64,000 bases of DNA from IMGVR_UViG_3300033146_002768:143112-207111; one strand, 5' to 3'. Shown: positions 14,655 to 33,125, counted from the first letter of the stretch. Translations and numbers: made by a program. The notes: a model not told the origin generated them from the letters alone.

Positions 14655-14664
14655 AATATCTTCC

Positions 14665-15384: not shown

Positions 15385-15387
15385 TAT

Positions 15388-16835: not shown

Positions 16836-16943
16836 TATTAAATTCCTTATTTATAAATAAATGGATCTTTTTTTTTAGATTTTCTTTTTTTAATTATATA
16901 TTTAATTTCTAAAATAAAGTCTATCCATAATTCTATTATTTTT

Positions 16944-18401
16944 TTAATCATGATTAAATACCTTTATATTGTGGTCTATTCCAAATTGGATTGCATCCGA
17001 TGAATTATTTACTAATGGTTGTCCTTTAACATTTAAACTAGTATTTAATAACATTGGGCATCCAGTCTTTTTATAAAATTCATTTATTAAATTCCAATAA
17101 CCAGGACTTTCTTTTTTATTAACTGTATGAACTCTTGATGTATTATCAACATGAACTATAGCAGGAAATTTATCAGGATACTTACATGTCATTACATATT
17201 GCATGTAAGGACTTTTAGAAATAATCATATTAAAATATTCAGCGGCATATTCCTCTAATATAGATGGTGAAAAAGGTCGAAACTTTTGACGATGTTTAAT
17301 GTCGTTAATTTTATCTTTTATATTATTCCCACGAGGATCAGCTAATAAAGATCTATTACCAAATGCTCTTGGTCCAAATTCTGCTCGACCATTTGCAACT
17401 CCAACAATATTACCTTTTAACAATTCTTCTAATAAAGATTTAACTGGATAATCACCTTTAATATTATGACCAAGATAAGGTCCTTTCCAATTTAATCTTC
17501 CATTAATTAATGAAGCGGCTCCTATAGAAGACCCCGAATCACCTGGATTAGGCATTATCCAAATGTCATTAAAATATTTAGGTATTAATCTATTAGCTAA
17601 ACAATTTAAAGCAACTCCGCCACAATAAACTAAATTTTTTGAATTAGATATATGTTTAGATTGTTTAATAATATTTTCAATTACTTCTTCTGTAACTTGT
17701 TGAATTGAAGCTGCTATATCTTTTAGATAAGCTCCTTGTAGATAATCATTTGGAATTCCTTTATGACAATTTATTTTAAGTTTAAAAAATTTATCTTTAA
17801 TAAAATCCTTTTTAATTTTATCAGCATAAGATGGATACCCCCAACCAGCCATTCCCATTAAAATATATTCATCTTCATTTGGTTTTAAACCACATCGTTG
17901 AGAAAATGCTGAATATAATATTCCTAATGAATGAGGATAATTAACTTTTTTCAATAATTTTAAATCATCTTTATTTCCTTCCCATATACTTAAAGTAGAC
18001 CATTCACCAATAGAATCTATACAAACAATAACAGCATTATCAAATGGAGAAGTAAAATAACTTGCAGCAGCATGACATTTATGATGATCCAAATATTTAA
18101 TTGGAGTTTTAGGAAAATCAAATTGTTTAAAATAATTATGAAATATATTTTTAGTTTGAAATACTTCATTATATTGACCAGCAAATAACTGTCTTGTTTT
18201 CTTTAAATATGGTTTTTCATAAAAAGCTATAACATCAGGAGTACCAAATCTTAAAGATTCATTTAATATTTCTTGGTTTAAATATAGATCATTTTTTATA
18301 CCAGAATATCGTTCTGAATGAGCAGCAAATAATATTTCATTGTCGTCTATTAATGCAATTGATGCATCATGACTTAGTGCATTTATTCCTAATACTTTCA
18401 T
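16944..18401 (-). CDS. Carbamoyltransferase, CmcH/NodU/TobZ family (copy 2)
   Basis: HDASIA, HHKCHAA, DSIGE, EYILMGMA, YCGGVALNC, PGDSGSSIGA, EFGPRAFGNRS, RQKFRPF, NTSLN. Confidence 0.93.
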   Translation of the reverse strand: MKVLGINALSHDASIALIDDNEILFAAHSERYSGIKNDLYLNQEILNESLRFGTPDVIAFYEKPYLKKTRQLFAGQYNEVFQTKNIFHNYFKQFDFPKTPIKYLDHHKCHAAASYFTSPFDNAVIVCIDSIGEWSTLSIWEGNKDDLKLLKKVNYPHSLGILYSAFSQRCGLKPNEDEYILMGMAGWGYPSYADKIKKDFIKDKFFKLKINCHKGIPNDYLQGAYLKDIAASIQQVTEEVIENIIKQSKHISNSKNLVYCGGVALNCLANRLIPKYFNDIWIMPNPGDSGSSIGAASLINGRLNWKGPYLGHNIKGDYPVKSLLEELLKGNIVGVANGRAEFGPRAFGNRSLLADPRGNNIKDKINDIKHRQKFRPFSPSILEEYAAEYFNMIISKSPYMQYVMTCKYPDKFPAIVHVDNTSRVHTVNKKESPGYWNLINEFYKKTGCPMLLNTSLNVKGQPLVNNSSDAIQFGIDHNIKVFNHD

Positions 18402-19321
18402 AATATATCCATTATTAATTCATGTTCATTATAAACTAATTTATCGAGTATATCTTCTTGAGATAAATTTATGATTTGTTCTTTGTTATCATCAATGTTA
18501 AACAGTTTTAAATAGTAATGGAGTCCATCATTAAACGTTTTATTTTTTGGAGAGTAATATACAGGTTTATTTAAATAACAAAACTCAAATATTAACTTAC
18601 CTATATTCTCCACAAAAATTCCTGTACATACTTCGATCCATCTTTGATATATGTATGAATTACAACCATGAGGTAATAACTTATCATTACTAATATTTAA
18701 ATGAGTTAAGTCACACCAGCTTATAATTTTTTGTTCATTAAAATAACTTTTGAATGTCCCCATATGTGCTTGTTTATTTTCATTTATATCTCTACTAGTA
18801 ACTAAATCTTTATCAATACTAGTTAATGACTTTTCAATATGATTTAATCTATTAATACTAAATTTATGATAATGAATAATAAACTTATCTACATATTGTT
18901 CGAATCGTTTATTGCTTGGGTTACCTAGAAGTGTTATTTGATCACAAAATATATGATTCTTAATATCAAACATATCATCAATATAATTATTATGATATGA
19001 AATATATAATTGAGAAGTATCTAATAATATTAAGTGGTTACAATATATTTTAAAATTTGTCTTCTTTAAAAATCTTAATGTATTTGTTGTTGTGATAATA
19101 GTATCCGATCTCACTTCATCAGTTACTAATCTATCAACAAATTTTTGTGGAGAATCTTGAAGATTCTTTTTAATTTGATTCATCAATGATTTAAAATCTG
19201 TGTTATATAATTTTAATACAAATTCTACATTAATCTGTTTTCTTAAACATAAATATAAATCTATAATTGTAGTATCAGATCCAGATATAGATCCTTTAAA
19301 AAATTCAAATATAGTTATCAT
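18398..19321 (-). CDS. Hypothetical protein, possibly degenerate GT-B glycosyltransferase-like
   Basis: Paralog of 19318..20208 (HGC.S..YQRW....N.F(V/I)ENIGKLIFEF.Y...VYY); fold is inferred only. Confidence 0.4.
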   Translation of the reverse strand: MITIFEFFKGSISGSDTTIIDLYLCLRKQINVEFVLKLYNTDFKSLMNQIKKNLQDSPQKFVDRLVTDEVRSDTIITTTNTLRFLKKTNFKIYCNHLILLDTSQLYISYHNNYIDDMFDIKNHIFCDQITLLGNPSNKRFEQYVDKFIIHYHKFSINRLNHIEKSLTSIDKDLVTSRDINENKQAHMGTFKSYFNEQKIISWCDLTHLNISNDKLLPHGCNSYIYQRWIEVCTGIFVENIGKLIFEFCYLNKPVYYSPKNKTFNDGLHYYLKLFNIDDNKEQIINLSQEDILDKLVYNEHELIMDIL

Positions 19322-20208
19322 AATAACTCCAATATAAAATCATCATTATTATATACCAGTTTTTGTTCTATATCATATGGAGATATATTTAAAGATTGAT
19401 CTATTGAGTCATCAATATTAAATAAACTTAAGTAATGATGAAGTCCGTCATCAATGGATTTATTCTTACATGAATAATAAACAAATTTATTAAAATATAG
19501 AAATTCAAAAATTAACTTCCCAATATTTTCTATAAAAACATTTGGTTGTATTTCATACCATCGTTGATATAAGAATGATGAACACCCGTGAGGATATGTA
19601 GTATAACTATTTTTTAAATGACTAAAATCATAATTATTTATACTCTTATTATATTTATTAAAATATTTTTTAAATTGAACAACATGACAATAATCTTCTT
19701 CATCAAAATTTAATTTAGTTGTTAATGATTTACTAATAGGAGTAAACTTATCCATTATATATTCTAATCGGTCACTGCTAAATTTATGATAATATTCAAC
19801 AAAATCAATATCTTCAAATAAATCATTACTAGGATTTCCAAAGAAAATTATTTTGTTAGCATAAATATTCTCCATAGGAAATTCTTTATAATTCATAACA
19901 CCTGCTGAATCTAGAATGATTAATTTATCGCAATATAATTTAATATCAGTTTGAGTTAATGTATAGAAATTAGTTATAATAGTATTTGTATTATCAATTC
20001 TACTTTTTACAAATTCATTTATTATTCCTAAATGAGATTCACAAAAATTTTTATGAAAGTCATCTAATAAATTTCTAAAGTCATTTGGTGTTGATAGTTT
20101 ATATGCCAACTTCACATCAAACTTATCTCTAAGAAAGAAGTATAAATCTATCATAGAAGTATTAGTTCCATTAATACCTCCAGAGTATAAATCAAATATT
20201 GTAATCAT
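19318..20208 (-). CDS. Hypothetical protein, tandem paralog of 18398..19321
   Basis: Near-identical start MITIF and C-terminal block ENIGKLIFEF...DGLH.YL.LFNIDD. Confidence 0.4.
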   Translation of the reverse strand: MITIFDLYSGGINGTNTSMIDLYFFLRDKFDVKLAYKLSTPNDFRNLLDDFHKNFCESHLGIINEFVKSRIDNTNTIITNFYTLTQTDIKLYCDKLIILDSAGVMNYKEFPMENIYANKIIFFGNPSNDLFEDIDFVEYYHKFSSDRLEYIMDKFTPISKSLTTKLNFDEEDYCHVVQFKKYFNKYNKSINNYDFSHLKNSYTTYPHGCSSFLYQRWYEIQPNVFIENIGKLIFEFLYFNKFVYYSCKNKSIDDGLHHYLSLFNIDDSIDQSLNISPYDIEQKLVYNNDDFILELL

Positions 20209-20777
20209 AATAACACCTCAATATCTATTCTTTCTCCACCTTGAAATTCAGTAATTCCAAAATTAGTTTCTAATATACCTTTATAAAATCTATCAGAAAC
20301 ATTATATGGAAAAGTAAATATACTTGGAGATATTTGTAAATGTTTTTCAAATTCTTTAAACATTTTCTCTGAATCATTATTTATATATTCGCATTTGTAT
20401 CTTAAATTATTTATTAATCTAAGGTCTGTATGACTGTGACTATGTCCACTTATAATAGTATTGTCTAAAGAATTAATAAATTTTATCTGACTCCAATTCA
20501 TATAATTTTCATAGTTTCCTGATTTAGCTTTTAACATAGCATCTTGACAAGTTATAAAGTCCCAACTTTGTGGTTCGCCTGTTGAGTTAACTACCCCTGT
20601 AGGTATATTAAAAATAAGTGTAGTATCTAAATCATATAAATCAGGAAGAAATAAATATTGAGTCATTAATGCATCATCAAAACTAAGAATATAATCCTCT
20701 AAAGACAAACATAAATATTCTTCTTTAAATTCATGTATCATTAATACTGGTTTATCTATATTCTTTTTTGTATACAT
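20205..20777 (-). CDS. Polysaccharide deacetylase (NodB/CE4-like)
   Basis: LSFDD, MNWSQI, GHSHSH, FTFPY motifs. Confidence 0.8.
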   Translation of the reverse strand: MYTKKNIDKPVLMIHEFKEEYLCLSLEDYILSFDDALMTQYLFLPDLYDLDTTLIFNIPTGVVNSTGEPQSWDFITCQDAMLKAKSGNYENYMNWSQIKFINSLDNTIISGHSHSHTDLRLINNLRYKCEYINNDSEKMFKEFEKHLQISPSIFTFPYNVSDRFYKGILETNFGITEFQGGERIDIEVLL

Positions 20778-21324
20778 ACCATAACCCCGATTTATTTCCT
20801 TGATCTAAAAAAATTTTATTATAATTAATAAATAAACTATTTAATGTTTTAATTATATCTTTTGGATTTTTTAATCCAATCGGTCCACATATTATAGACT
20901 CTTTAGATTTTAATTTTGGTTTACTTAATATCAATAATTTAGATAATCTTTTAAAATCATAAAATGAATCAACCATAATTAAATCTATACTCTTATCACT
21001 AAAATTATTTATTGAGTTTAATACATCATCTTTTATTGTTTTTACATATTTATTAATTTTATATTTTTTGATATTTTTTTTCAAAGTATTTTTCATATTA
21101 TATTCATCTATATCTATACAATAAACTTCTAATTTCTTATAAATAATATATGGAGATATACTACAAATTGATCTACCTTTATAATTGCCACATTCTACTA
21201 ATGTTGAATTATCTGGGATCAAATCTAATAGCGCCCAATATCCTAATACTGATGTATAATCAAACCACCCTTCTGGCAATCCTTCATATAATATTTTTGG
21301 ATATATATTGCGAGCTTGAATCAT
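20752..21324 (-). CDS. Class I SAM-dependent methyltransferase (Methyltransf_24-like)
   Basis: VECGNYKGRS motif I, YCID, DLIMVDS. Confidence 0.7.
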   Translation of the reverse strand: MIQARNIYPKILYEGLPEGWFDYTSVLGYWALLDLIPDNSTLVECGNYKGRSICSISPYIIYKKLEVYCIDIDEYNMKNTLKKNIKKYKINKYVKTIKDDVLNSINNFSDKSIDLIMVDSFYDFKRLSKLLILSKPKLKSKESIICGPIGLKNPKDIIKTLNSLFINYNKIFLDQGNKSGLWYVYKKEYR

Positions 21325-22145
21325 ATAAATTGCCTCACTATTTCATCGTCTTTATTTAAGTATCTATTTTTTAATCCGTTCATATTTAAATCAATATTTC
21401 TATAATAACTTCCATCCTTCCATATCGGTATATTATTATAGATTATATTTTTTTCATAAAAATAAGATTCATGCATTAATCTTGGTCTTGGATCCCACCA
21501 TTTAGCTGCATGGTAATACCAAAAAATATCAAACAATTCAAATAAATTATTTTTATGTTTATGAGTTTTAAATATACATTGTTTTTTAGAAATTCCCCAT
21601 TCTTTTAAAAAACTATAATCATCGCTTTCAGGAGAATGTATAAAAAATTTATCGTCAGATTTTCTTAATGGTTTATATCTATCAAATAAAAATTTCATAT
21701 TATATTGAAAATCTTTATAAACGAATGGCATTTCCCCATAATAATTTACACAACCTTCTGGATATAAATTTTTATTAATTAAATACTTTTTATCCTCAGT
21801 ATGTAAATCTGATAAAATAAAAATTTTTGATTTATTATCTTTGATATTAATAAGACCTTGAACTGCATTTATAGTTCCATAATCTAAAATTAACAATTTA
21901 TTGAATTTAAATTTTAATAGATCTTTTTTCTTTATAGAAATAATGTTAATCTCCCAATCTAAATCATCTAAGTAATATCTTTCTTTAATAATACTAATGA
22001 GTTCTTTTTGAAAAATTGAATTATAATTAATAATTAATAATTTAAAATCTTTATTAAATTCTAAAATACTTAAATAATATTCAACAAGATCTATTACGGC
22101 ACCATGTATATTATTTATATAATTATTAAATAAAATAGCATTCAT
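21321..22145 (-). CDS. Glycosyltransferase-like hypothetical protein
   Basis: N-terminal HGAVIDL, similar to the 18398/19318 pair; C-terminal DPRPRLMHE resembles a GT-B nucleotide-sugar motif. Confidence 0.4.
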   Translation of the reverse strand: MNAILFNNYINNIHGAVIDLVEYYLSILEFNKDFKLLIINYNSIFQKELISIIKERYYLDDLDWEINIISIKKKDLLKFKFNKLLILDYGTINAVQGLINIKDNKSKIFILSDLHTEDKKYLINKNLYPEGCVNYYGEMPFVYKDFQYNMKFLFDRYKPLRKSDDKFFIHSPESDDYSFLKEWGISKKQCIFKTHKHKNNLFELFDIFWYYHAAKWWDPRPRLMHESYFYEKNIIYNNIPIWKDGSYYRNIDLNMNGLKNRYLNKDDEIVRQFI

Positions 22146-22163
22146 TATAGTTCCTTATATTCT

Positions 22164-23063
22164 TCATAATACTTCTCCCTCAATCCAATCTGAGAAATAT
22201 TTATATTTAGTTCTATCTAAAATATGTTCAAAATTATTATCAAATACTTTTAAAAAGAATTTTTTAAAAACCTTACTACTAAAAATTGTATTTATATTAT
22301 CTAATTTATAATCTAATATTAATTTATTGTGATGTCTTGTAACTTCACATATATCATCAATACCATCTTTATGATTTCTGCCAAAAACTTCAGGACAAAT
22401 AATTTGACAATCGGACTGGATAGCTTCTATTAAAGTATGAGGAAATGGGTCTTGGAATTGTTTTGATTTAGGATAAATATAATGAGTTACTTTTTTAAAA
22501 AACTCAATATTATTAAAGGTATGAGTATATTGTTTAATATGCTTATTAGAAATGTTTAAAGAACCGATATTATTTCCCATAGTATAAATATTAACATCTT
22601 GTTTTATATCTTTTAAAATATCAGTTATACATTTAAAACTATCTGGCGTTAACCAGTTTCTTATATAGAATCCAACACAAGGAATGTTAGATGAATTTTT
22701 TTTATTTATTTTAAAATCTGTTATGAAAGGAATGTAATGTTTTATTTTTCTTGCTGACGTATAGTAAAAACCATTATTACATGTATCATATAAAATAGAA
22801 TGATCTCTAGAATACATTAAATAATTTAAGTTTCTTAAACTAATTATATTCAATGGAAATGAATAATTAGAAGCATCTTGTGTATTAAATATAATTCTTT
22901 GATATTGCTCATTCAATTCTCTTAAATGAGCAATATCTCGAATTTGTTTACAATGAATAGTATCTATATAATCACTATGTTCTTCAGCTAATCTTTGAGA
23001 TGCAGTAAATGCTCCTCTTTTTAAATTGTCGTACTTCACGGATATAACTAAATATTTTTTCAT
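22164..23063 (-). CDS. GT4-like glycosyltransferase
   Basis: HYIYPKS..FQDPFPHTLIEAIQSDC resembles the GT4 E/D-x7-E motif. Confidence 0.55.
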   Translation of the reverse strand: MKKYLVISVKYDNLKRGAFTASQRLAEEHSDYIDTIHCKQIRDIAHLRELNEQYQRIIFNTQDASNYSFPLNIISLRNLNYLMYSRDHSILYDTCNNGFYYTSARKIKHYIPFITDFKINKKNSSNIPCVGFYIRNWLTPDSFKCITDILKDIKQDVNIYTMGNNIGSLNISNKHIKQYTHTFNNIEFFKKVTHYIYPKSKQFQDPFPHTLIEAIQSDCQIICPEVFGRNHKDGIDDICEVTRHHNKLILDYKLDNINTIFSSKVFKKFFLKVFDNNFEHILDRTKYKYFSDWIEGEVL

Positions 23064-23087
23064 TTATATTCTGGTGAAACCTTCTTT

Positions 23088-23681
23088 TTAATTAAATGCT
23101 GAATAGAATGTAGCTAACCTTGCTTCAATATCTTCAACAGTTGTTAGTAATATAACTTCATCTGAGAAAATTTTGTAAATATCATAAGTTGATTTTCTCT
23201 CATCTAATTTATCTCTAAGATCTAAATAAATATCTAAAGCATCAATTATTGCTTGATCCCCTGCATTTATTATTTCAAGATATTTAGCTTCTCTATTTTC
23301 ATCAGTAATTACATAACCAAGATCAATCAATCTATTATTTATAATAGTAAATCCATAAAAATCAAACATTGAAAGACTACCAACTCTGTTTGATGTAAAT
23401 TGTCTAGCTTGATTTCTTGCACCAAGAGCTGCTGCAACAATTGCATCTTCTGCTGCCTGAATTATTAGATCACCTTCGACTAATGGATTGATTAAATTTT
23501 TAGCAAAGAATACTGATTGATTAGCTTCTAAAGAAGTTTCAATTGCGTTATAGCATTCAATTGATGAAATTTCATATAGTCTAACTCCGCCAAATTCAAA
23601 GATAGTTTCTTCATCCCCTTGAAATACAGATACTATTTGGTAATTAACACCAACATCATTAATACCAGCTATAAGTTTCAT
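23088..23681 (-). CDS. Hypothetical protein heading the glycan-enzyme block
   Basis: 197 aa ORF with GGAGG RBS and late-promoter-like motif at 23778. Confidence 0.6.
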   Translation of the reverse strand: MKLIAGINDVGVNYQIVSVFQGDEETIFEFGGVRLYEISSIECYNAIETSLEANQSVFFAKNLINPLVEGDLIIQAAEDAIVAAALGARNQARQFTSNRVGSLSMFDFYGFTIINNRLIDLGYVITDENREAKYLEIINAGDQAIIDALDIYLDLRDKLDERKSTYDIYKIFSDEVILLTTVEDIEARLATFYSAFN

Positions 23682-23765
23682 AACTACGCCTCCGTTTATT
23701 ATTTTTAGAATTAATTTGATTATTTAAATGAATTTTTTTACATTAGTTAATAACTAACACTTTCT

Positions 23766-23785
23766 TATTTATAAATATGTTCTAT
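23766..23785 (-). promoter_or_regulatory. Putative late promoter
   Basis: TAGAACATATTTATAAATA upstream of 23681. Confidence 0.6.
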
Positions 23786-23808
23786 ATTTTTTAATAATCT
23801 AACCTTAA

Positions 23809-24921
23809 TTATTTTCTATCAAAAACTCCATTTATTTTTCCCCAAATAGGAGACAAACCTTCATGATATGATTCTTTTGGATTTGACATTCTCCATTTAT
23901 AAAGAGGACCGCTTACACAATGAGTCTCTGTTGAATTATTTAAATATTTTGTATTAACAACCATACTTCCATATTTAATCGCTTCTTCAACAATTGTAGT
24001 TCTCCACATAGGTAATATGGCTGTTACTATATTACCTGTATCAGGATTATCTGTTTTATCAAATCTTAAAATTGATAAACACTGTTGATGAAATCTAGCA
24101 TTATCTAAATAATAACTTTTATCTAAATCTCTTGATTTACAAATAAATTTTATTAATTGAGATAACATTGGAAAATATGTTCCATGCAACTGATCTGAAA
24201 TTCCTCTATACCTAATTTCTTGAGGTTTATATTCTCTACATACTTTATCAAGTTTTAACATTGGCTCTGTAGTATCACAACTTAATAATACTCCATAAGA
24301 ATATTCTTGATTAGGTTTTAAAGTTATAATATTTTCAGTTATATCTCTAATGTATTTAGGATCAGTTTCACTATCTACACTTAACGCCCAATTAACTTGA
24401 TTACTATCTGGAAATTTATTTATATAAGTATGATCTAATAATTTAATACCATTAGTATAAATATGTATTTTATTATTTGTATTTTCACAAATCCAATGAA
24501 CTAATTTATCAAGATCTTTAAACATAGTTGGTTCTCCACCAACCATTCTAATCACTGGATGATATCCATCATAATGATATTCTTTATATGGTCTTGAACC
24601 ATAACCTCTTAGATCATTAGGAACAAATTCTTTTATATTACTTATAAAATCTTCAAGGGTATTGTTACCAGGATGTTTAACAATCAAATCTTTTTCATAA
24701 CAATATTTACAATTTTTATTACAATCATTTGTCATATGAAAAAATGATGTGAAGTAACCTCCTGCTGTTTCTTCGGGATGAAATTGTTTTTCCCAAATAC
24801 TAAAATCTTCTTCTAATAATACTTTATCATCTTCTGATACTAACCATACTCCATTCATATCATAAACAATTTTCTTTTCTATTATATCTCTAAATTTATT
24901 TAAACCATGTATATTAGTCAT
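23809..24921 (-). CDS. Radical SAM protein
   Basis: CNKNCKYC, VGGEPT, YTNG. Confidence 0.88.
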   Translation of the reverse strand: MTNIHGLNKFRDIIEKKIVYDMNGVWLVSEDDKVLLEEDFSIWEKQFHPEETAGGYFTSFFHMTNDCNKNCKYCYEKDLIVKHPGNNTLEDFISNIKEFVPNDLRGYGSRPYKEYHYDGYHPVIRMVGGEPTMFKDLDKLVHWICENTNNKIHIYTNGIKLLDHTYINKFPDSNQVNWALSVDSETDPKYIRDITENIITLKPNQEYSYGVLLSCDTTEPMLKLDKVCREYKPQEIRYRGISDQLHGTYFPMLSQLIKFICKSRDLDKSYYLDNARFHQQCLSILRFDKTDNPDTGNIVTAILPMWRTTIVEEAIKYGSMVVNTKYLNNSTETHCVSGPLYKWRMSNPKESYHEGLSPIWGKINGVFDRK

Positions 24922-25951
24922 TACTAATTTCTCCTGTATGAAAATTCTGATTATAATAATATGTTATTGGACATATATCATAAATACTATTTTTAATATT
25001 ATCTATTAAATATCGTTGAATTAAAAACAACTTAGACTGGTATATATCGTCTATGCTGGTGTATAATTCTGGATCTATATTAAGGTCATCATTAAATTTA
25101 TATGGCGCAAAAAACGGACATTGGACTATTGTATTGTTATAAGTATAGATAGCCTTTAATGGAAATCTATGACAACCATTAACATGATAAGATACATCAA
25201 CATTATCTAATTTTATAATATCTTGAAATTCAGAGTATGTTTTTTGTATTGTATTAAAATTATTACAAGGGTTTTCTAATTCTTCATAATCCTTTAATAA
25301 TTGCAAGACATAAGTTAAATTTAATGGTTTATACTTTTCCATTATATATAATAATTCATCTCTATTTTTTATTACAGTATTAGCTATAACTTTAATTCCT
25401 ATGTCTTGTAATCGTTTTATATTTTTATAATGCTCTTCAAAGAAACCTTTATCAAAATGATAGTAATCTATTGAAGTATAAAAAGTAAATTCCTTACCAA
25501 CAGCATCACATATATCTTTACATAAAATAAAAAACATTAAATTATTTCCAATGTTTTTTAAGTTAGAATTAATTCTAAAACTTAATTTCATTTTATGTCT
25601 TGTATAAATATTTAAACAACGATCTAAAAATTTTAATAAATCATTTGCTGGCAATAAGGTTAACTCACCACAATTGAAATGAAGTTTTAAAGAATCATGA
25701 CCGTCATTTTTAAATTCAATTAAATACTTTTCTAAAAAAATATAAAATTTTTCATAATCAAATTCTTCATCTTGATTTAAATATTCTTTGAAGCAACAAT
25801 GTTCGCAATTCATATTACATTTACTAGTTAAATTCACCCCAAGGTTAGGAGTGAATTTAACTATATTATTTTCTTGTAATATAATTTTATTACACCAACT
25901 TTGAAAATCATTGCTATTCTCTATATGTCTAAACAATTCTTTTATATGCAT
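24914..25951 (-). CDS. Radical SAM protein
   Basis: CNMNCEHCC, NCGELT, INSN, C-terminal CHRF...CPF. Confidence 0.85.
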   Translation of the reverse strand: MHIKELFRHIENSNDFQSWCNKIILQENNIVKFTPNLGVNLTSKCNMNCEHCCFKEYLNQDEEFDYEKFYIFLEKYLIEFKNDGHDSLKLHFNCGELTLLPANDLLKFLDRCLNIYTRHKMKLSFRINSNLKNIGNNLMFFILCKDICDAVGKEFTFYTSIDYYHFDKGFFEEHYKNIKRLQDIGIKVIANTVIKNRDELLYIMEKYKPLNLTYVLQLLKDYEELENPCNNFNTIQKTYSEFQDIIKLDNVDVSYHVNGCHRFPLKAIYTYNNTIVQCPFFAPYKFNDDLNIDPELYTSIDDIYQSKLFLIQRYLIDNIKNSIYDICPITYYYNQNFHTGEISND

Positions 25952-25958
25952 ATGTTTC

Positions 25959-26519
25959 CTATAGATATTCTATATCATATTTTAATCTAATATCACTTTT
26001 AGCTGAATAGTTACAGTTACATGTGCAAGCATAATTACAATTACATGTACAAGCATAATTACATTGACATGTACATGCATAATTACATTGACATGTACAT
26101 GCATAATTACAATTACATGTACAAGAATAATTACAATCACAAACACATATTGCTTCTATAACATTAACTCTATCTCTCATTGCATTATATTGTTGAGCTT
26201 CAATTTCATCATCTGTACCAGTATCAGTATCAGCTAAATATGACGGCCATGTCCATGCAGTAGCAGCATTGATGCCATCACGAAGTCTTCTAACATGTAA
26301 ACTACTAGCATTAGTTGCAGTAGTAACAGCACCTGGATCTGCTGGCCAGCTAGCACTTCTTCTTGTTAATTCTGCAGCAATAGCTGTTCTTAATTCATTA
26401 TGATAAATAGCTTTAATTGAGTTAGTTGTTAATGGATCGTCGCTCCAAGTAGTAGGAGTTATACCTGGTATATACCCTCCATGTGCTGGGCAACTATTTG
26501 TGTGTCCTCCGCAAGCCAT
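25959..26519 (-). CDS. Cys-rich repeat fibre-like protein A (candidate radical SAM substrate)
   Basis: Six C-x-C-x-C-N-Y units, three internal W..D...H/Y..(L/M)R..(I/V) repeats, and terminal SDIRLKYDI. Confidence 0.85.
   Translation of the reverse strand: MACGGHTNSCPAHGGYIPGITPTTWSDDPLTTNSIKAIYHNELRTAIAAELTRRSASWPADPGAVTTATNASSLHVRRLRDGINAATAWTWPSYLADTDTGTDDEIEAQQYNAMRDRVNVIEAICVCDCNYSCTCNCNYACTCQCNYACTCQCNYACTCNCNYACTCNCNYSAKSDIRLKYDIEYL
26007..26147 (-). repeat. 24-bp-period coding tandem repeat encoding (x)CTCxCNY
   Basis: Plus-strand units such as gcataattacaattacatgtacaa repeated without spacers. Confidence 0.95.
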
Positions 26520-26531
26520 AGTATTATCTCC

Positions 26532-27107
26532 TTATTTAGTGCCTGAATAGTTACAATCACATGTACATGAATAATTACAATTACATGTGCAATAGTTACA
26601 ATTACAAGTACAATAGTTACAATTACAAGTACAAGCATAATTACAATCACAAGTACAATTATAATTACATTGACATGTACAAGCATAATTACAATCACAA
26701 ACACATTCAGTTTCCATTGTATTGACTTGCGATCTAATAGCATTATATTGATCTACTTGAATTAGATCTCCAACTTCTGTATCTGGATCGTCTAAATAAG
26801 ATGGCCATGTCCATGCTTTAGCAGCATTTACTCCATTTCTTAATTGTCTTACATGATTACTTTCAATTATATTTGTAGTAGCTACTGTTCCTGGGTCAGT
26901 TGGCCAACTTTGACTACGTCTAATTAATTCATCATCAATAGCATTTCTAAGTTCGTTATGATGTGTTGTTATAAACTTAGTAGATGTGGTTAACGGTTGT
27001 GTAGTCCACACAGTAGGAGATTCTGGGTATATTCCCTGAACATTAGATAGACAAGTGTTACTATGGTCTTCGCATGAAGATGGTGTTGTATGTCCTGTAC
27101 ATGCCAT
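26532..27107 (-). CDS. Cys-rich repeat fibre-like protein B (paralog of A)
   Basis: Seven C-x-C-x-C-N-Y units; shares HNELR.AI..EL.RRS.SWP.DPG and AWTWPSYL.D with A. Confidence 0.85.
   Translation of the reverse strand: MACTGHTTPSSCEDHSNTCLSNVQGIYPESPTVWTTQPLTTSTKFITTHHNELRNAIDDELIRRSQSWPTDPGTVATTNIIESNHVRQLRNGVNAAKAWTWPSYLDDPDTEVGDLIQVDQYNAIRSQVNTMETECVCDCNYACTCQCNYNCTCDCNYACTCNCNYCTCNCNYCTCNCNYSCTCDCNYSGTK
26547..26705 (-). repeat. 21/24-bp-period coding tandem repeat encoding CTCxCNY
   Basis: Seven units, directly readable. Confidence 0.95.
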
Positions 27108-27110
27108 AAT

Positions 27111-28259
27111 TTATCCTCCGTTTTGTTGCAATAATTTTCTTATCGCAAAAACTATTTTTCCATTTATTTTATAAAAATTGCATAATCTTGGTTGTGTAGT
27201 ATAATCTCTCCATTTCTCAAAATAGTCTTTCTTTTCACTTCGGTCAAATTTAACCGGATTACATCTTAAACAAAATGTCGCTAAGCAATTTTTACATTCC
27301 TCAGGTTCCCAACCAAAATTATTATTATGTAACTTATTAGTTATATCTAAATTTGTTATAAAGGATTCATTTTTAATATCAATAATTAAATGTTCACCTT
27401 TTTTATCATCGTACATACTTCCATGACATTTGAAAATATTACCATCCCAATTAACACAAACCATATCTCGACCTGCGCAACATAAAGCTTTATTAGGATT
27501 AAACCAACTAAAGAAGAATTTATTATTTGTTTTGAAAAATTCTATTTCTTCCTTAGCAATTTTAATTAAAGACTCATTCAGTTCTTTATTGAATACTTCT
27601 ATTTCTTTATTATTATATTTTTCTAAGTTATAATAATCTATTGTTGGAAAATAATTATCACTTCTAAAGAAATTATTTTCAGGCATTTCTTTATAAAGAT
27701 TTAATACATCTTCTCTTGCTTCAGGAAGATATTTAAATGCTTCAGGTGATATAGTAGATTTTATAACTGATGGTATTTTTCTTTTCCATAAGTCTTTAAT
27801 AACATTTCTTATTTTAGTACCAGTTAATTTATTCTTTTTAGTTTTTCTAAAGATATCATGAACTGGCATACCATCATATGATACTTGAACACAAAACTTT
27901 GGATGACCAAACAAAGATTTATTTTTAGATTCTTCAAATATATCCATATAACGATCTAATAAATATCCATTGCTATAAATAAAAAACTTTACTCTATCAT
28001 CTGTTTTAAAAGCAGTGTATATTTTTCTAATTGCTTTTTCATTAAGAGTAGGTTCCCCACCCCAAAATCCAATATTAAGTAAATCATAATTCTTTTTAAA
28101 GAAATCAGAATTTAAAAGTTGATTCATTTTTATAATAAACAATTCATGATCTTTAAATTCTTTATGTTCAAAAAATTCATGTTCAAAACAATAGGTACAA
28201 TTGAAATTACAATTTGCTGTAACCGTTAAGTCGATATTATATATTCTTATATTTTGCAT
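27111..28259 (-). CDS. Radical SAM/SPASM peptide-maturase-like protein
   Basis: CNFNCTYC, GGEPTL, SPASM-like CCAG...V...DGNIFKCHG...CKNC.ATFCLRC. Confidence 0.9.
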   Translation of the reverse strand: MQNIRIYNIDLTVTANCNFNCTYCFEHEFFEHKEFKDHELFIIKMNQLLNSDFFKKNYDLLNIGFWGGEPTLNEKAIRKIYTAFKTDDRVKFFIYSNGYLLDRYMDIFEESKNKSLFGHPKFCVQVSYDGMPVHDIFRKTKKNKLTGTKIRNVIKDLWKRKIPSVIKSTISPEAFKYLPEAREDVLNLYKEMPENNFFRSDNYFPTIDYYNLEKYNNKEIEVFNKELNESLIKIAKEEIEFFKTNNKFFFSWFNPNKALCCAGRDMVCVNWDGNIFKCHGSMYDDKKGEHLIIDIKNESFITNLDITNKLHNNNFGWEPEECKNCLATFCLRCNPVKFDRSEKKDYFEKWRDYTTQPRLCNFYKINGKIVFAIRKLLQQNGG

Positions 28260-28269
28260 TATTCACCTT

Positions 28270-29265
28270 TTAGAATTGTCTAAATTCATGCTTTGTTTCT
28301 TTTTCATCATATGTAATTCCTGTTGTAGGAGATAAATATGAATTACCTATAAAATTATCTTTTTCACATATTCTGCATATATCACATACATGTCCACAAA
28401 TAGGAATTTTATATCTTTCAAAAATAGATTTTAAATATGGAAGATTTTTTTCTTTAATTGTTTTGCCTACATGTGATTGTTTTAAAGTATCATCAAGTTC
28501 TTGATAAGCATATCCAATAGTAATCCTACTTAAATAATCACTATTAAATTTTTCTAATATATAAATAGTATCGTCAATTACTTTATCATAATTACCAGAA
28601 TGAACTGTATAACTAATTTTAAAAGGAATTTTATATTTAGATAATGTTTTAATAGATTCTTCAACTATATCTTTACTATTAGTTCCATCTGGAAATTTTC
28701 TTTTGAATTGTCCAGAACCATCATAACTTATTTCCAAATTAAAACTTATATTATAGTGTTTACCATATTCTATTAAACTTTTTAAAGCATTTAATTTGAT
28801 AGAATTAAATAAGGTAGCATTAGTTATTAAACTTAATCCAAATCCTTTTGCTTTACCTTGAGAAACTAATTCTATTGTTTTAGCTATTGTATATTGTATT
28901 AAATCAAATTTTAAAAAGGGTTCTCCGCCCATAATAACAATAGTTGATATACAGTCTTTTTCTCTTACGCAAATTTCATTTAAAAAATCATCAATCATTT
29001 TAGGAGTACAATTAGCTTGATCTTCAAGACCATTCTTACTACTAGATTCATAGCAATATGTACATCTTAAATTACAATCAGTATTTAAATAAATAACATT
29101 AGTTCTTTGACTATTATTCATTTTAATTTTATTTGTTGGCAGATTGATACAAGTGTCAAATTCACAAGAGTTACATTCACCATTACATTTTTGAGATTCA
29201 TTCTTTGATAATATATCACTCATATCATTAAAGAATGAATCTATATGTTTATCTATTTGATACAT
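28270..29265 (-). CDS. Radical SAM protein with Cys-rich N-terminal extension
   Basis: CNLRCTYC, MGGEPFL, ITNA; N-terminal CNGECNSCEFDTC; C-terminal C...CD.C..C. Confidence 0.88.
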   Translation of the reverse strand: MYQIDKHIDSFFNDMSDILSKNESQKCNGECNSCEFDTCINLPTNKIKMNNSQRTNVIYLNTDCNLRCTYCYESSSKNGLEDQANCTPKMIDDFLNEICVREKDCISTIVIMGGEPFLKFDLIQYTIAKTIELVSQGKAKGFGLSLITNATLFNSIKLNALKSLIEYGKHYNISFNLEISYDGSGQFKRKFPDGTNSKDIVEESIKTLSKYKIPFKISYTVHSGNYDKVIDDTIYILEKFNSDYLSRITIGYAYQELDDTLKQSHVGKTIKEKNLPYLKSIFERYKIPICGHVCDICRICEKDNFIGNSYLSPTTGITYDEKETKHEFRQF

Positions 29266-29693
29266 TAGTTTCCAATACTTTGTCTAATTTTATCTACTAA
29301 AGATGTAATTTCATCATCAATGTTTTCTTGTACTATTGGCGGTGTAGTTCCATCTGGAATATTTGAATGTCCATGACAATTAAATGCCGGGTCTTCATTG
29401 TTTTCTATATTAGTAACTGGACGTTTAAATAATTCTGAGGCTTCTTGAACAGGGTGATTAGAAACTGGGTGTTTAAATAGTTCTGAGGATTCTTGAATAG
29501 GTTGACTAAAAATTTCTGGTTCATTACATTTACAATTGTCATCTTCTAATAATTTCAATACTTTATCACTTAATTGCAAAGCTTCAAAACTAACTTCATC
29601 ATTAATTTCTTTCATTGCATGTGTGATTTTTAAAAGACCTTTAGCACAATTAAAAATAATTTCATTTTGTTCTGGTGTATTATTACAACTCAT
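29265..29693 (-). CDS. Hypothetical protein with short internal duplication
   Basis: PIQESSELFKHPVSN / PVQEASELFKRPVTN. Confidence 0.6.
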   Translation of the reverse strand: MSCNNTPEQNEIIFNCAKGLLKITHAMKEINDEVSFEALQLSDKVLKLLEDDNCKCNEPEIFSQPIQESSELFKHPVSNHPVQEASELFKRPVTNIENNEDPAFNCHGHSNIPDGTTPPIVQENIDDEITSLVDKIRQSIGN

Positions 29694-29708
29694 TTTCGTT
29701 TCTCCTTC

Positions 29709-30824
29709 TTAACCTACATTTTTTATTGAATTAATTAATGTTTCTTTAAACATTTTATTTTCTTTTAGTTCTTTGGTAATTCTCATTGTATTTTTATAAG
29801 TAATTTTTAATATCTTACATAAATTATCAATCGGTTCTGCATACTCTTCTGGTGATGATGAATTTTTTAATTGACTATTCATACACCCACCATTACAGTA
29901 TTTATATAATTCACATTCTAAACATTTTTTAAATGTCTTAGGATTTATTAGATTTGGATTTCTAAGTAATTGAATTTCTTTAGTAAATTCTTGATTAAAT
30001 GAATTTCCTATTTTCTTTTCTTTACAGCTACCAAATCTTGCACATGGATATATATCTCCATTAGGCATAAACCCAGCTCCACCAGTTCCAGCAAAACAAC
30101 CAAAAGGTCTTTTACCAAAACTCTTACCAAATAAAAGGTCTAAAGTATATAGTTGAAAGAATCCAACATTAGCATTAATGCCTTCGTTATAATATTTGAT
30201 TACTTGGTTAGCTAATAAATGACATTCAATTTCATAATTAGCAACATCATAATCTGTCCATATATCATCTCGAACTAATGTAAAATCAGGGTTGTTGACA
30301 TTTAATTCTTCAACAAACCATTTAAAATTATCAACCATTGTAGGAACACAATCAGGTGATACCATTACTTTACACCCACCACCACGTCCAAAGAAATATG
30401 ATTTTAATGGTTCAGTTAAATATAAATCTAAACTAGAACCACCATGTTTCAATTTACGATTTTTTTCATTCCACAATCCATCAAATGATAAAGACAATGC
30501 AATCTGATTATCATCAATGTATTGTCTTTTATAATCATCTTGTAATACTAAACCATTTGTCATTGCTATAATAAATTTACAATGAGAATCATTTTTTAAA
30601 ATTGGAATTATATATTCAATAAGCTCCCAATTTAATAATGGTTCACCACCAAACAATGCAGCAGTATATTCATGTTGTCCATAAAAGTCCATTATCTTTG
30701 GGAGCATCTTAAAATGTTTATCAAATATTTCGTTTGTCATATTATTCGGTTGTTGATTAATATAACAATATTCACAAGCTAAATTACAATCTTCAGTCGT
30801 TACTATCTGAAATTCAAATCCCAT
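29709..30824 (-). CDS. Radical SAM/SPASM (anSME-like) maturase
   Basis: CNLACEYC, FGGEPLLN, SFDG, full SPASM-like CFAG...G.IYPC...CLECELYKYCNGGC...C. Confidence 0.92.
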   Translation of the reverse strand: MGFEFQIVTTEDCNLACEYCYINQQPNNMTNEIFDKHFKMLPKIMDFYGQHEYTAALFGGEPLLNWELIEYIIPILKNDSHCKFIIAMTNGLVLQDDYKRQYIDDNQIALSLSFDGLWNEKNRKLKHGGSSLDLYLTEPLKSYFFGRGGGCKVMVSPDCVPTMVDNFKWFVEELNVNNPDFTLVRDDIWTDYDVANYEIECHLLANQVIKYYNEGINANVGFFQLYTLDLLFGKSFGKRPFGCFAGTGGAGFMPNGDIYPCARFGSCKEKKIGNSFNQEFTKEIQLLRNPNLINPKTFKKCLECELYKYCNGGCMNSQLKNSSSPEEYAEPIDNLCKILKITYKNTMRITKELKENKMFKETLINSIKNVG

Positions 30825-30834
30825 TATATTTCCT

Positions 30835-31359
30835 TTATTTCACGAATCCTAATACTAATTTTTCATCTGGATTATCATTAGTTTCTAATGCAATAGCCAC
30901 TTTAAATATATGTTCTAATACATTAGTTGCTGATCTTAAACAACCATTACCTGCAGAAATAAGAATATCTTTTTTATAAACTGGTCCGATTGTTCTAACT
31001 GGAACTCTACCAACTAAACCAACAACTGCTCCATCTTCCATTTTTGTATTCATTTCGAAACCAGGTGCTTTAGAAATAATACCAACTACAAATTCAGATG
31101 CATCTTTATCACAAATCTCTGCATCAAATTCACTATCAGATATTTCCATTACTGTCCCAATAGGAAGAGAAATATCTGGATTAACAGAATATCTCTCAGC
31201 AAGGTCACCGTAATATGCTCCAGTTGTATCACCTTGAAATGTAGCACAAAAAATATTATTAAATCTATCAGTTAGACCGCTACCTATATTGTATGCTCCA
31301 TTGCCAACATCAGTAGTAGTTTCATCTTTACCAATTTTTTGTCTTATTTTATAATTCAT
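30835..31359 (-). CDS. Stand-alone tail-spike chaperone-like domain (Peptidase G2/IMC-like)
   Basis: GDLAERY...GTV.....VGIIS..P...VGLVGRVPV...G.V.K.D.L. Confidence 0.6.
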   Translation of the reverse strand: MNYKIRQKIGKDETTTDVGNGAYNIGSGLTDRFNNIFCATFQGDTTGAYYGDLAERYSVNPDISLPIGTVMEISDSEFDAEICDKDASEFVVGIISKAPGFEMNTKMEDGAVVGLVGRVPVRTIGPVYKKDILISAGNGCLRSATNVLEHIFKVAIALETNDNPDEKLVLGFVK

Positions 31360-32501: not shown

Positions 32502-33125
32502 TTAGTCACTTATTATATCAGTGTCCTCAAATACATCTTGAACAGTAGGATAGTGTTTATCTACTGTTACAATTATCCAGCCATCATCTTTTAATTTTTG
32601 ATTTTTATGTGGATCAGGAAATGGATCTTCATTATGCCAAAAAGAATTAGGAAAGTCAAATGCTACTTTCTTAATAGGGTCAGCCATATCAGTAATATAT
32701 TTCCATAATAATGCATCATCATGAAAATGTCTTTTCTCTATACTATAATTATTTTCTAAGTAAGGATAAGCATCATGAAGGAATGTTAGAATATCAGCTT
32801 TATTTTTTGATACTCCTTCTAAGTTTATATGTGAAAACTTATCATTCAATAAAGGATTATCAATATCTATTTCTTCATCTAATGGTTCAGATGGTATTCC
32901 TTCTGTATCTTGAAATAGAATACTATCTTTGAATTTATATCTTGTCGCTTGATATTGTGTGCTAGATATAGGACAATCTGGATACTTTAATTTATACTCA
33001 GCGAAGGTCATTCCATCATGTTTCTTTTTTAAATGTTTAGGTGTTATAAGTCTGAATGCTTCGCCACACTCTTGGCATATAACTTTACCATTTATACCTT
33101 TAGGATATTGCAACTCAATAGTCAT
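32502..33125 (-). CDS. Zn-finger plus degenerate DUF559/Vsr-like endonuclease
   Basis: CQEC...HLKKKH finger; YITDMADPIKKVAFDFPNSFWH where active enzymes have D....IE.DG..WH. Confidence 0.6.
   Translation of the reverse strand: MTIELQYPKGINGKVICQECGEAFRLITPKHLKKKHDGMTFAEYKLKYPDCPISSTQYQATRYKFKDSILFQDTEGIPSEPLDEEIDIDNPLLNDKFSHINLEGVSKNKADILTFLHDAYPYLENNYSIEKRHFHDDALLWKYITDMADPIKKVAFDFPNSFWHNEDPFPDPHKNQKLKDDGWIIVTVDKHYPTVQDVFEDTDIISD

What the first reader, a model, noticed from the sequence alone, without database searches (positions are those of the whole stretch)
25959..27107. Two tandem paralogs ending in 6 and 7 C-x-C-x-C-N-Y repeats
Seen: A has six units (20 Cys in total) and B has seven units (24 Cys). 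The first x is T/V and the second is N/D/Q, with invariant Asn-Tyr. The N-terminal ~135 aa holds three internal repeats of W..D...(I)...H/Y..(L/M)R..(I/V)(N), which looks like a trimeric fibre shaft rather than a short RiPP leader. Inference, three alternatives: (a) Cys-to-Asn/Asp/Thr thioether ladders as in ranthi/sactipeptides; (b) Tyr crosslinks; (c) CxC triads from three chains binding metal along a needle, like the HxH iron sites in T4 gp37.
Basis: partly seen in the sequence, partly recalled or inferred. Interest (0 to 1): 0.88.

Follow-up and report, generated by a model that had tools for sequence, protein, structure and literature searches.

The report
Cysteine-repeat phage fibre proteins with radical-SAM partners
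Two neighbouring genes of an uncultured 207-kb phage encode small fibre-like proteins ending in a ladder of Cys-x-Cys-x-Cys-Asn-Tyr repeats, and they travel with three radical-SAM enzymes of the type that staples cysteines into thioether bridges, so they are probably enzyme-crosslinked virus structural proteins, which has not been described before.

Summary
Two minus-strand paralogs, A (25959..26519) and B (26532..27107), carry 6 and 7 C-x-C-x-C-N-Y units, where chance expects none. Each also has an N-terminal domain made of three internal repeats.

They belong to a large, unannotated family found almost only in phages (606 hits). Its consensus unit is C-T-C-(N/D/Q)-C-N-Y with a spacer of 0 or 1 residue.

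- **Fibre link.** In relatives the array runs straight into a Peptidase_S74 intramolecular chaperone. That domain is either fused or split into a 12-residue Ser-Lys stub plus a separate 87-103-aa ORF. A keeps only the stub, B has nothing, and no partner ORF lies in the window.
- **Enzyme partners.** Three radical-SAM genes (29709..30824, 28270..29265, 27111..28259) sit beside the repeat gene in 21 of 25 informative loci. All three score best against PapB-type thioether maturases. One has an ortholog near a repeat protein in Campylobacter Firehammervirus phages, and that protein was detected, weakly, in virions.
- **N-terminal domain.** It models as a compact three-helix domain of unknown fold, not a shaft.

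Best reading: a beta-helical fibre protein whose cysteines are crosslinked by the enzyme trio. The chemistry, the oligomeric state and the location on the virion are inferred, not shown. I rate it a new variant of a known kind.

The parts
25959..26519 (-). Protein A, 186 aa: Cys/His N-terminus, three-repeat helical domain, six C-x-C-x-C-N-Y units, and a chaperone stub
   Evidence: ORF. Family search: 227 representative clusters. AlphaFold2 model.
26532..27107 (-). Protein B, 191 aa: a paralog of A with seven units and no stub (ends SGTK)
   Evidence: 606 homologs; 54% identity to A.
26007..26147 (-). Repeat array of A (residues 125-171): six units, each separated by a one-residue spacer
26547..26705 (-). 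Repeat array of B (residues 135-187): seven units with spacers of 0 or 1 residue
25962..25997 (-). Stub SDIRLKYDIEYL of A (residues 175-186). It corresponds to the first ~12-15 positions of the Peptidase_S74 chaperone domain and includes the Ser175/Lys180 pair, spaced like the catalytic dyad.
   Evidence: Fused relatives match Pfam PF13884 positions 1-51, starting at the SD right after the last CNY. Split partner ORFs match positions 15-18 to 54. Dyad spacing from PMC8326128.
26148..26489 (-). N-terminal domain of A (residues 11-124): three loop-plus-helix repeats
   Evidence: pLDDT above 94, helices 37-53, 73-86 and 108-122. Internal repeats. No fold match in PDB or BFVD.
26472..26519 (-). 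Extreme N-terminus of A, MAC-GGH...C-PAH: two C-x-x-H units. B has the same kind at 27042..27107. Relatives carry 2-5 such units.
   Evidence: Alignments. Sequences.
27111..28259 (-). Radical-SAM/SPASM enzyme, 382 aa. It ends 3 nt before B starts and is the core partner of the repeat proteins.
   Evidence: Pfam. Best NCBIfam hit is PapB family, E 7e-23. Orthologs sit beside the repeat gene in 18 of 25 loci. 34% identical over its full length to CPt10 gp141.
28270..29265 (-). Radical-SAM enzyme, 331 aa, second member of the conserved trio
   Evidence: (PapB family, E 1e-17).
29265..29693 (-). Small helical protein, 142 aa. It is conserved between the first and second enzyme of the cassette in most loci and may be an adaptor.
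   Evidence: Gene order. Sequences. No family hit.
29709..30824 (-). Radical-SAM/SPASM enzyme, 371 aa, third member of the trio. It lacks an N-terminal peptide-recognition domain.
   Evidence: Pfam SPASM. PapB family E 1e-40 across the whole profile. CteB (5wgg) E 6e-19, aligned from CteB residue 104.
23809..25951 (-). Two further radical-SAM genes (345 and 370 aa) directly downstream of A, in the position where relatives carry the chaperone partner ORF. They have no orthologs in the other loci.
30835..31359 (-). 174-aa protein resembling the C-terminal part of tail fibre proteins, immediately upstream of the cassette
   Evidence: phrog_19602 'tail fiber protein', E 3e-7, and phrog_22593, E 3e-8.

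Best explanation
A and B are small fibre-like structural proteins of a T4-related jumbo phage. Each has three parts: a compact N-terminal three-helix domain, a C-terminal array of 7- or 8-residue units (C-T-C-N/D/Q-C-N-Y), and, in A, the first strand of an endosialidase-type intramolecular chaperone. The array most likely forms a beta-helical shaft with one short strand per unit. By analogy with the proteins this chaperone folds, the shaft would be a three-chain beta-helix. While the chain is still unfolded, the three conserved enzymes encoded just upstream act on the repeats. The small 142-aa protein, or the substrate's own N-terminal domain, may replace the missing recognition domain. The most likely products are thioether bridges from Cys sulfur to a side-chain carbon of the Asn/Asp/Gln three residues downstream (C1 to x4, C3 to N6). 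The third Cys and the Tyr would be handled by the third enzyme. The result would be a covalently stapled, protease- and redox-resistant fibre. Shown: the repeat family, its phage restriction, its link to the chaperone, and its conserved synteny with the enzyme trio. Inferred: that A and B are the substrates, the chemistry, the trimeric state, and the location on the virion.
For: - Family: 606 homologs with an almost invariant unit and a spacer of 0 or 1 residue.
- Fibre link: fused family members carry Peptidase_S74 directly after the last unit. In nine loci an 87-103-aa ORF immediately downstream supplies the rest of the domain, and those ORFs score above Pfam's gathering cut-off.
- Virion neighbourhood: tail-fibre-like, endosialidase-like and collagen-repeat proteins lie nearby.
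- Enzyme synteny: at least one ortholog of the trio lies beside the repeat gene in 21 of 25 informative distinct loci, and the 382-aa type in 18.
- Cultured phages: among 50,697 phage records, the same 15 Campylobacter Firehammervirus genomes hold both the 382-aa ortholog and a heptad-repeat protein, about 2.3 kb apart.
- Enzyme type: all three enzymes score best against PapB-type ranthipeptide maturases, one over the full profile. The seven other radical-SAM proteins of the window match only generic core models. The closest solved structure is the thioether-forming CteB.
- Virion detection: the IBB_35 homolog (gene 3-9, 60,318 Da) was detected in virions by MS (PMC3322345 Table S2).
- Fold hint: a single-sequence AlphaFold2 model of a 28-unit relative puts one 4-residue strand in most of the units, with pLDDT up to 77.
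- Precedent: protein-sized thioether substrates with a C-x-x-Q/D motif are known from CrpA/CrpC (PMC13692751).
Against: - No modification has been measured.
- All three enzymes score far below the NCBIfam cut-offs (140, 64 and 81 bits against 340), so the chemistry is not established. SPASM enzymes also make C-C and ether links, epimerise residues and oxidise Cys.
- Bridges from residue i to i+3 fit poorly with residues alternating on the two faces of a beta strand. The CrpA authors raised the same conflict.
- The closest homolog of A (P0004, locus L007) has no radical-SAM gene within 10 kb. Three other groups of loci also lack one nearby.
- In this window the chaperone partner is absent and B has no stub, so trimer folding by that route is not assured here.
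- Virion detection rests on 2.6% coverage of a distant relative that shares only the repeat region.
- AlphaFold2 gives pLDDT of about 40 for the repeats of A.
Confidence: 0.5

Rival explanations
1. Unmodified cysteine-ladder beta-helix. The Cys point into the core of a trimeric or single-chain beta-helix and bind metal ions or form disulfides, like the His-x-His iron sites of the T4 long-fibre tip or the cysteine annulus of the P22 tailspike. The neighbouring enzymes would work on something else.
For: The repeats are equally conserved in loci with no nearby radical-SAM gene (L007, L020, L022, L029). Tyr is replaced only by His or Phe, and Thr by beta-branched or hydrophobic residues, as expected for packing positions. 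The N-terminal C-x-x-H units look like metal ligands. The model of the 28-unit relative is beta-rich, and its fold-search hits, all non-significant, are mostly beta-solenoid proteins. The P22 cysteine annulus is a precedent (PMC3357383).
Against: It does not explain why three dedicated SPASM/twitch enzymes stay glued to this gene across very divergent phages, with a stop-to-start gap of 3 nt here. Metal binding and enzymatic modification are also not mutually exclusive.
Confidence: 0.2
2. The substrate is the same but the chemistry differs. The trio would install Tyr-based or other carbon-carbon or ether crosslinks, epimerise alternating residues, or oxidise Cys, rather than making Cys thioethers.
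For: One invariant aromatic residue per unit. The NCBIfam lists for the trio also include cyclophane-forming, dynobactin, quinohemoprotein and sulfatase-maturase models at E 1e-10 to 1e-19. None reaches a curated cut-off.
Against: The top hit of all three enzymes is a thioether maturase, as is the best solved structure. The three invariant Cys per unit would be unexplained if Tyr were the only target.
Confidence: 0.15
3. A RiPP-like precursor with an unusually large leader. The N-terminal domain would serve only for recognition, and the modified Cys-rich core would be released as a bioactive or metal-binding peptide rather than built into the virion.
For: The architecture of a folded N-terminus followed by a repetitive Cys-rich C-terminus and adjacent maturases resembles CrpA and large-leader RiPPs. 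The Ser-Lys stub could act as a follower cleavage site.
Against: No protease or exporter was recognised among the neighbours scanned. The Peptidase_S74 chaperone is a hallmark of trimeric fibres and spikes. The family is essentially confined to phage contigs, next to fibre genes. A relative is virion-associated.
Confidence: 0.1
4. An iron-sulfur or metal carrier that supplies the twelve radical-SAM enzymes of this genomic island.
For: 12 radical-SAM ORFs lie within 22 kb. C-x-C motifs are typical of metallothionein-like proteins (own knowledge).
Against: The association is with three specific enzymes and not with the number of radical-SAM genes. The chaperone domain and the fibre context argue for a structural protein.
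Confidence: 0.05

Closest known systems
CrpA/CrpC of Methanococcus voltae (a cysteine-rich protein crosslinked by a SPASM radical-SAM enzyme; PMC13692751)
   Same: The substrate is protein-sized. It has a folded or conserved N-terminal part and a C-terminal array of Cys repeats containing C-x-x-(Q/D)-type motifs. The maturase is an adjacent SPASM enzyme, a paralogous second substrate gene sits next to the first, and a beta-helix is predicted for the repeats at low confidence.
   Different: CrpA has a 17-residue repeat; the units here have 7 or 8 residues. CrpC carries a recognition (RRE) domain, which the phage enzymes lack. The phage system has three enzymes instead of one, lies in a viral fibre context, and is linked to a chaperone domain. 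TIGR04463 matches the phage enzymes only weakly (E 1e-9 to 6e-11).
Ranthipeptide and SCIFF systems (PapB/freyrasin, CteB/thermocellin) and QhpD/QhpC
   Same: These enzymes are the best sequence matches of the trio. Their substrates have repeated Cys with Asp, Asn or Thr acceptors a few residues downstream.
   Different: Those substrates are short peptides with leader sequences, or a small enzyme subunit in the case of QhpC. They come from cellular genomes and are not fibre-like. The phage enzymes fall far below the equivalog cut-offs.
Tail fibres and spikes carrying the Peptidase_S74 intramolecular chaperone (K1F endosialidase, T5 pb1; MyRF in animals)
   Same: Family members have the domain directly after the repeat shaft, with the Ser-x4-Lys pair in the right position.
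   Different: In most members the domain is split between two genes at about profile position 15. The shaft is a cysteine heptad array. A retains only the stub and B has nothing.
Campylobacter Firehammervirus hypothetical protein (CPt10 gp145 / CPT_0180 / IBB_35 gene 3-9; phrog_26958)
   Same: It has the same CTCDCNY heptads (6-7 copies), preceded by a helix. An ortholog of the 382-aa enzyme lies three genes away. It was noted in 2010 as the only intragenic 21-bp repeat of those genomes (PMC2853527).
   Different: It is 534 aa with an unrelated N-terminal half and a long Cys-containing C-terminal extension. It has no chaperone stub, and only one of the three enzymes is detectable nearby.
T4 gp5 C-terminal needle and gp37 tip (own knowledge)
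   Same: Short 8-residue-type repeats build a three-chain beta-helix, and in gp37 ligand triads from three chains bind metal along the axis.
   Different: There is no sequence relation, and those proteins use His or aliphatic cores rather than Cys and have no enzymatic crosslinking. This is an analogy only.

Membership tests
phrog_26958 (phage proteins of unknown function) | Significant match to the PHROG profile | tested here: met
   E 2e-12 for A and 1e-19 for B, but only over the repeat region (profile positions 268-339 of 534).
Peptidase_S74 chaperone-bearing fibre/spike proteins | Pfam PF13884 domain at the C-terminus | tested here: not met
   A and B give no Pfam hit. A has only the first ~12 residues. 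Fused relatives P0088 and P0106 pass the cut-off, as do the split partner ORFs (24-32 bits against a cut-off of 22). No partner ORF was found in the window by tblastn or HMM.
Peptidase_S74 chaperone-bearing fibre/spike proteins | Ser and Lys of the autocleavage dyad, five residues apart (S911/K916 in endoNF) | tested here: met
   A has Ser175 and Lys180 in SDIRLK, in register with the family consensus SDxRLK. B lacks them.
Peptidase_S74 chaperone-bearing fibre/spike proteins | Homotrimer with a triple beta-helix upstream of the domain | not testable with these tools
   Only monomer prediction was available. The repeats of A have pLDDT of about 40.
Radical-SAM/SPASM thioether (ranthipeptide/sactipeptide-type) maturation systems | Adjacent enzyme with CX3CX2C and a SPASM or twitch auxiliary-cluster domain | tested here: met
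   Pfam Radical_SAM, Fer4_12 and SPASM hits. CX3CX2C at residues 13, 17 and 64. C-terminal Cys clusters read from the translations.
Radical-SAM/SPASM thioether (ranthipeptide/sactipeptide-type) maturation systems | Score above the curated cut-off of a characterised maturase family (PapB, SCIFF, QhpD, TIGR04463) | tested here: not met
   Best scores are 139.9, 63.9 and 81.3 bits against the PapB cut-off of 340.
Radical-SAM/SPASM thioether (ranthipeptide/sactipeptide-type) maturation systems | Leader peptide recognised by an RRE domain on the enzyme | tested here: not met
   The enzymes start directly with the radical-SAM core. The alignment to CteB begins at CteB residue 104. That the first ~100 residues of CteB form its RRE is own knowledge. 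The substrate's N-terminus is a 115-residue folded domain.
Radical-SAM/SPASM thioether (ranthipeptide/sactipeptide-type) maturation systems | Substrate Cys followed by an acceptor residue (Asp, Asn, Gln, Glu or Thr) a few residues downstream | tested here: met
   Every unit holds C1-x-x-(N/D/Q)4 and C3-x-x-N6. Across 230 proteins, x4 is N 61%, D 22%, Q 10%, and position 6 is N 88%.
Radical-SAM/SPASM thioether (ranthipeptide/sactipeptide-type) maturation systems | Demonstrated S-C crosslink | not testable with these tools
   This needs mass spectrometry of the co-expressed protein.
Metal-binding fibre needles (T4 gp37 type) / metallothionein-like proteins | Bound metal coordinated by the repeat residues | not testable with these tools
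   No homology to any solved structure by sequence or by fold.

The most novel reading that the evidence does not exclude
This would be the first virus structural protein matured by RiPP-type radical chemistry. A phage fibre shaft would be built from 7- or 8-residue Cys-x-Cys-x-Cys-Asn-Tyr units, with a dedicated trio of recognition-domain-less radical-SAM enzymes stapling each unit with up to three covalent crosslinks. The shaft would then be folded by an endosialidase-type chaperone that has been split into a stub and a free-standing protein. It would also give a first function to some of the enigmatic radical-SAM genes of Campylobacter phages.
Probability: 0.4. Interest if true: 0.85.

Novelty: new variant of a known kind. 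Interest (0 to 1): 0.7.

Why it matters
Radical-SAM thioether chemistry is known for small peptides and, very recently, for a few cellular proteins. It has not been reported for a virion component.

If confirmed, this family would have three consequences:
- It would show that phages use RiPP-type enzymes to harden their own fibres. The family has hundreds of members in large AT-rich phages, including cultured Campylobacter phages used for biocontrol.
- It would offer an explanation for part of the unexplained excess of radical-SAM genes noted in CP220 and CPt10 in 2010.
- It would provide a compact, genetically encoded, repeat-by-repeat crosslinking module, together with a naturally split intramolecular chaperone, for protein engineering.

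A cultured system and simple E. coli co-expression make the hypothesis directly testable.

Tried and rejected
- Nucleotide and tblastn searches of GenBank phages with the region and with B found nothing. For the protein search the low-complexity filter probably masked the repeats. The 534-aa Campylobacter relative found through IMG/VR had to be used as the query instead.
- Pfam and NCBIfam give no family for A or B.
- A profile search of PDB sequences gave only spurious helical or WD40 matches. Foldseek of the A model against PDB and BFVD found nothing at E below 0.08. Foldseek of the 28-unit model gave only non-significant beta-solenoid hits.
- The chaperone partner ORF was looked for in the window with tblastn and with an HMM over all six frames, and was not found. 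An IMG/VR scan with the partner alignment did not list the window's contig among the best 80 of 114 hits, so its absence from the other 143 kb of the contig is not proven.
- Read-through of A's TAG stop was considered and rejected. The next ORF is in another frame and encodes a radical-SAM enzyme, and in relatives the partner ORF lies in different frames relative to the stub.
- A scan of 185,579 species genomes found no relative with A's own peptides. A heptad-pair DNA pattern found three short MAG contigs. One has the same phage-type cassette and the other two encode proteins resembling the Campylobacter-phage 534-aa repeat protein.
- A search restricted to the N-terminal domain returned only close relatives, so whether that domain occurs without repeats remains open.
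- The promoter and terminator scan was uninformative in this AT-rich DNA.
- Five literature searches found no paper on radical-SAM modification of phage structural proteins.

Full report
**What is there.** The window is part of a 207,111-bp viral contig, IMGVR_UViG_3300033146_002768. Its GC content is 21-34%. It encodes a distant T4-type major head protein, a portal protein, a DnaB-like helicase and an NAD-dependent ligase.

On the minus strand lie protein A (25959..26519, 186 aa) and protein B (26532..27107, 191 aa). A has six C-x-C-x-C-N-Y units and 20 Cys. B has seven units and 24 Cys. The degenerate DNA pattern for the unit occurs 13 times in the window, only inside these two genes, and never in 100 shuffles. 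A and B are 54% identical.

**The family.** B finds 606 homologs in public metagenomes. A finds 227 representative clusters at the 50% identity level. None carries a functional name, and there is no Pfam or NCBIfam model. The only library hit is phrog_26958, of unknown function, and it covers the repeats alone.

Across 230 members the unit is C, T (75%), C, N/D/Q (61/22/10%), C, N (88%), Y (91%; otherwise His or Phe). The spacer is absent (545 cases) or one small residue (588 cases). Proteins carry 2 to 28 units.

The family is essentially viral. It has 31 loci in IMG/VR and no relative of A in 185,579 species genomes. A heptad-pair pattern found three short MAG contigs. One holds the same phage-type cassette, and the other two encode proteins resembling the Campylobacter-phage 534-aa repeat protein.

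**The chaperone link.** About half of the members end, like A, with a 12-residue tail of consensus S-D-x-R-L-K-x-D-I-x-Y-L. About twenty members continue from this motif into a full Peptidase_S74 domain, the intramolecular chaperone of endosialidase-type fibres. Pfam aligns its positions 1-51 starting at the Ser-Asp directly after the last unit.

In nine loci the stub-bearing gene is followed at once by an 87-103-aa ORF. Three of these ORFs were scanned against Pfam and match positions 15-18 to 54 of the same profile, above the gathering cut-off; the others were recognised by an HMM built from five of them and by Pfam hits already on record. The chaperone domain is thus split between two genes, and the stub carries the Ser and Lys that form the autocleavage dyad. 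The spacing matches S911/K916 of endoNF and S587/K592 of MyRF (PMC8326128). In A these residues are Ser175 and Lys180.

This chaperone is known to fold trimeric beta-helical stalks. That is the main reason to read the repeat array as a fibre shaft.

In the window itself the picture is degenerate. A has the stub, B has none, and no partner ORF exists within the 64 kb. Two radical-SAM genes not found in any other locus (24914..25951 and 23809..24921) occupy the partner's usual place.

**The enzymes.** Twelve ORFs between 8583 and 30824 carry an N-terminal CX3CX2C motif. Three of them form a conserved cassette with the repeat genes, together with the small 142-aa protein. The order is: 371-aa enzyme, small protein, 331-aa enzyme, 382-aa enzyme, then B and A.

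Orthologs of at least one of the three lie beside the repeat gene in 21 of 25 informative distinct loci. The 382-aa type is present in 18.

All three score best against the PapB family of ranthipeptide maturases (E 1e-40, 1e-17 and 7e-23). SCIFF, Cys-repeat and QhpD maturases follow, but none reaches a curated cut-off. The closest solved structure for the 371-aa enzyme is CteB, and the alignment begins after CteB's N-terminal region. The other seven radical-SAM proteins of the window match only generic core models.

**Cultured relatives.** Campylobacter Firehammervirus phages (CP220, CPt10, CP21, IBB_35 and others) encode a 534-aa protein with six or seven CTCDCNY heptads. Three genes downstream sits a 389-aa radical-SAM protein. 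It is 34% identical over its full length to the window's 382-aa enzyme (E 3e-69).

In the GenBank phage collection the same 15 records hold both genes. They belong to one lineage, so this counts as a single event. The 2010 genome paper noted the 21-bp intragenic repeat and the puzzling 11-12 radical-SAM genes (PMC2853527). In IBB_35 the homolog is gene 3-9 (60,318 Da), and it was detected in purified virions at 2.6% coverage (PMC3322345).

**Structure.** With a 71-sequence alignment, AlphaFold2 models residues 11-125 of A as a compact three-helix domain, one helix per internal repeat, with pLDDT above 94. The repeats get a pLDDT of about 40. The domain has no significant match in PDB or BFVD.

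A single-sequence model of a 28-unit relative places one 4-residue strand in most of the units, with pLDDT of 55-77. Its fold-search hits are all non-significant, and many of them are beta-solenoid proteins such as the left-handed beta-helix enzymes GlmU and LpxA. This is weak support for a beta-helical array. It cannot distinguish a one-chain helix from a three-chain helix.

**Interpretation.** I consider it likely (about 0.75) that A and B are the substrates of the enzyme trio. It is fairly likely (about 0.6) that they are trimeric fibre-like virion proteins. The chance that the chemistry is Cys thioether formation is about even. Each unit offers two overlapping C-x-x-(N/D/Q) motifs. The same kind of motif was pointed out in CrpA, the archaeal cysteine-rich protein shown in 2026 to receive ranthionine links from a SPASM enzyme (PMC13692751).

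The match of three Cys per unit to three enzymes is suggestive, but it is only an inference. The main tension is geometric: links from residue i to i+3 do not fit a regular beta strand. Either the shaft is not a classical beta-helix, or the crosslinks have a different topology.

The loci without nearby enzymes, including the closest homolog of A, keep the rival reading alive. In that reading the Cys ladder is held by metal or disulfides and is not modified.

**Novelty.** Five literature searches found no report of radical-SAM modification of phage structural proteins. The components are known kinds: SPASM maturases, Cys-repeat substrates and Peptidase_S74 fibres. Their combination is new, as are the heptad unit, the enzymes without recognition domains, and the split chaperone.

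Noticed in passing
window 8583..30824: Twelve radical-SAM ORFs lie within 22 kb. Seven of them (8583..16188, 239-340 aa) match only generic core models. They are interleaved with two Nol-like carbamoyltransferases (11265..12809, 16944..18401), a DUF6071 protein (16185..16835) and a methyltransferase (20752..21324). Related loci carry similar runs of ~300-aa radical-SAM genes next to sugar-nucleotide enzymes. The target of this island is unknown.
   Followed up: partly
L001:10704-10994, L002:10528-10821, L003:10709-11017, L004:10701-10976, L007:10602-10865, L041:2751-3050: The Peptidase_S74 intramolecular chaperone is naturally split. About 12 residues, including the Ser-Lys dyad, stay on the fibre gene, and the remaining ~90 residues are a separate ORF in a different frame a few bases downstream. 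I found no description of such a split.
   Followed up: partly
window 23809..25951: Two radical-SAM genes (345 and 370 aa) have no ortholog in any of the other fetched loci. They sit exactly where relatives carry the chaperone partner ORF.
   Followed up: partly
window 29265..29693: A 142-aa helical protein is conserved in position between the first two cassette enzymes in most loci. It has a shared C-terminal ...KIR.E... motif, variable Cys/His-containing middle parts, and here an internal ~15-residue duplication. It might replace the recognition domain the enzymes lack.
   Followed up: partly
window 26472..26519 and 27042..27107; L001:10001-10130; L012:8001-8100: The extreme N-termini of family members consist of 2-5 copies of a C-x-x-H unit spaced 5-7 residues apart, starting M-A-C-x-G-H. 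These could be a metal site or a further modification target.
   Followed up: no
L020:1895-7918 and L029:3286-7893: In two groups of loci the repeat protein directly follows a giant 2007-aa or 1535-aa protein with 12 collagen triple-helix stretches, and there is no radical-SAM gene nearby. In L029 the units read CPCNCNF instead of CTCNCNY.
   Followed up: partly
L009 (end of a 202,719-bp contig) and L010 (start of a 79,155-bp contig), same sample: One contig ends and the other starts inside a repeat-protein gene, which suggests an assembly break caused by the repeats. In L010 the chaperone partner ORF lies six genes further downstream instead of adjacent.
   Followed up: no
window 32502..33125: A 207-aa protein with a ROS/MucR-type zinc-finger DNA-binding domain (E 6e-7) sits at the head of the long minus-strand gene block.
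   Followed up: no
L039:9001-10605 (CPt10) and HE815464.1 74991-76592: The Campylobacter phage repeat protein is annotated in CP21 and WX1 as 'putative N-acetylneuraminate pyruvate lyase'. Nothing seen here supports that name.
   Followed up: no
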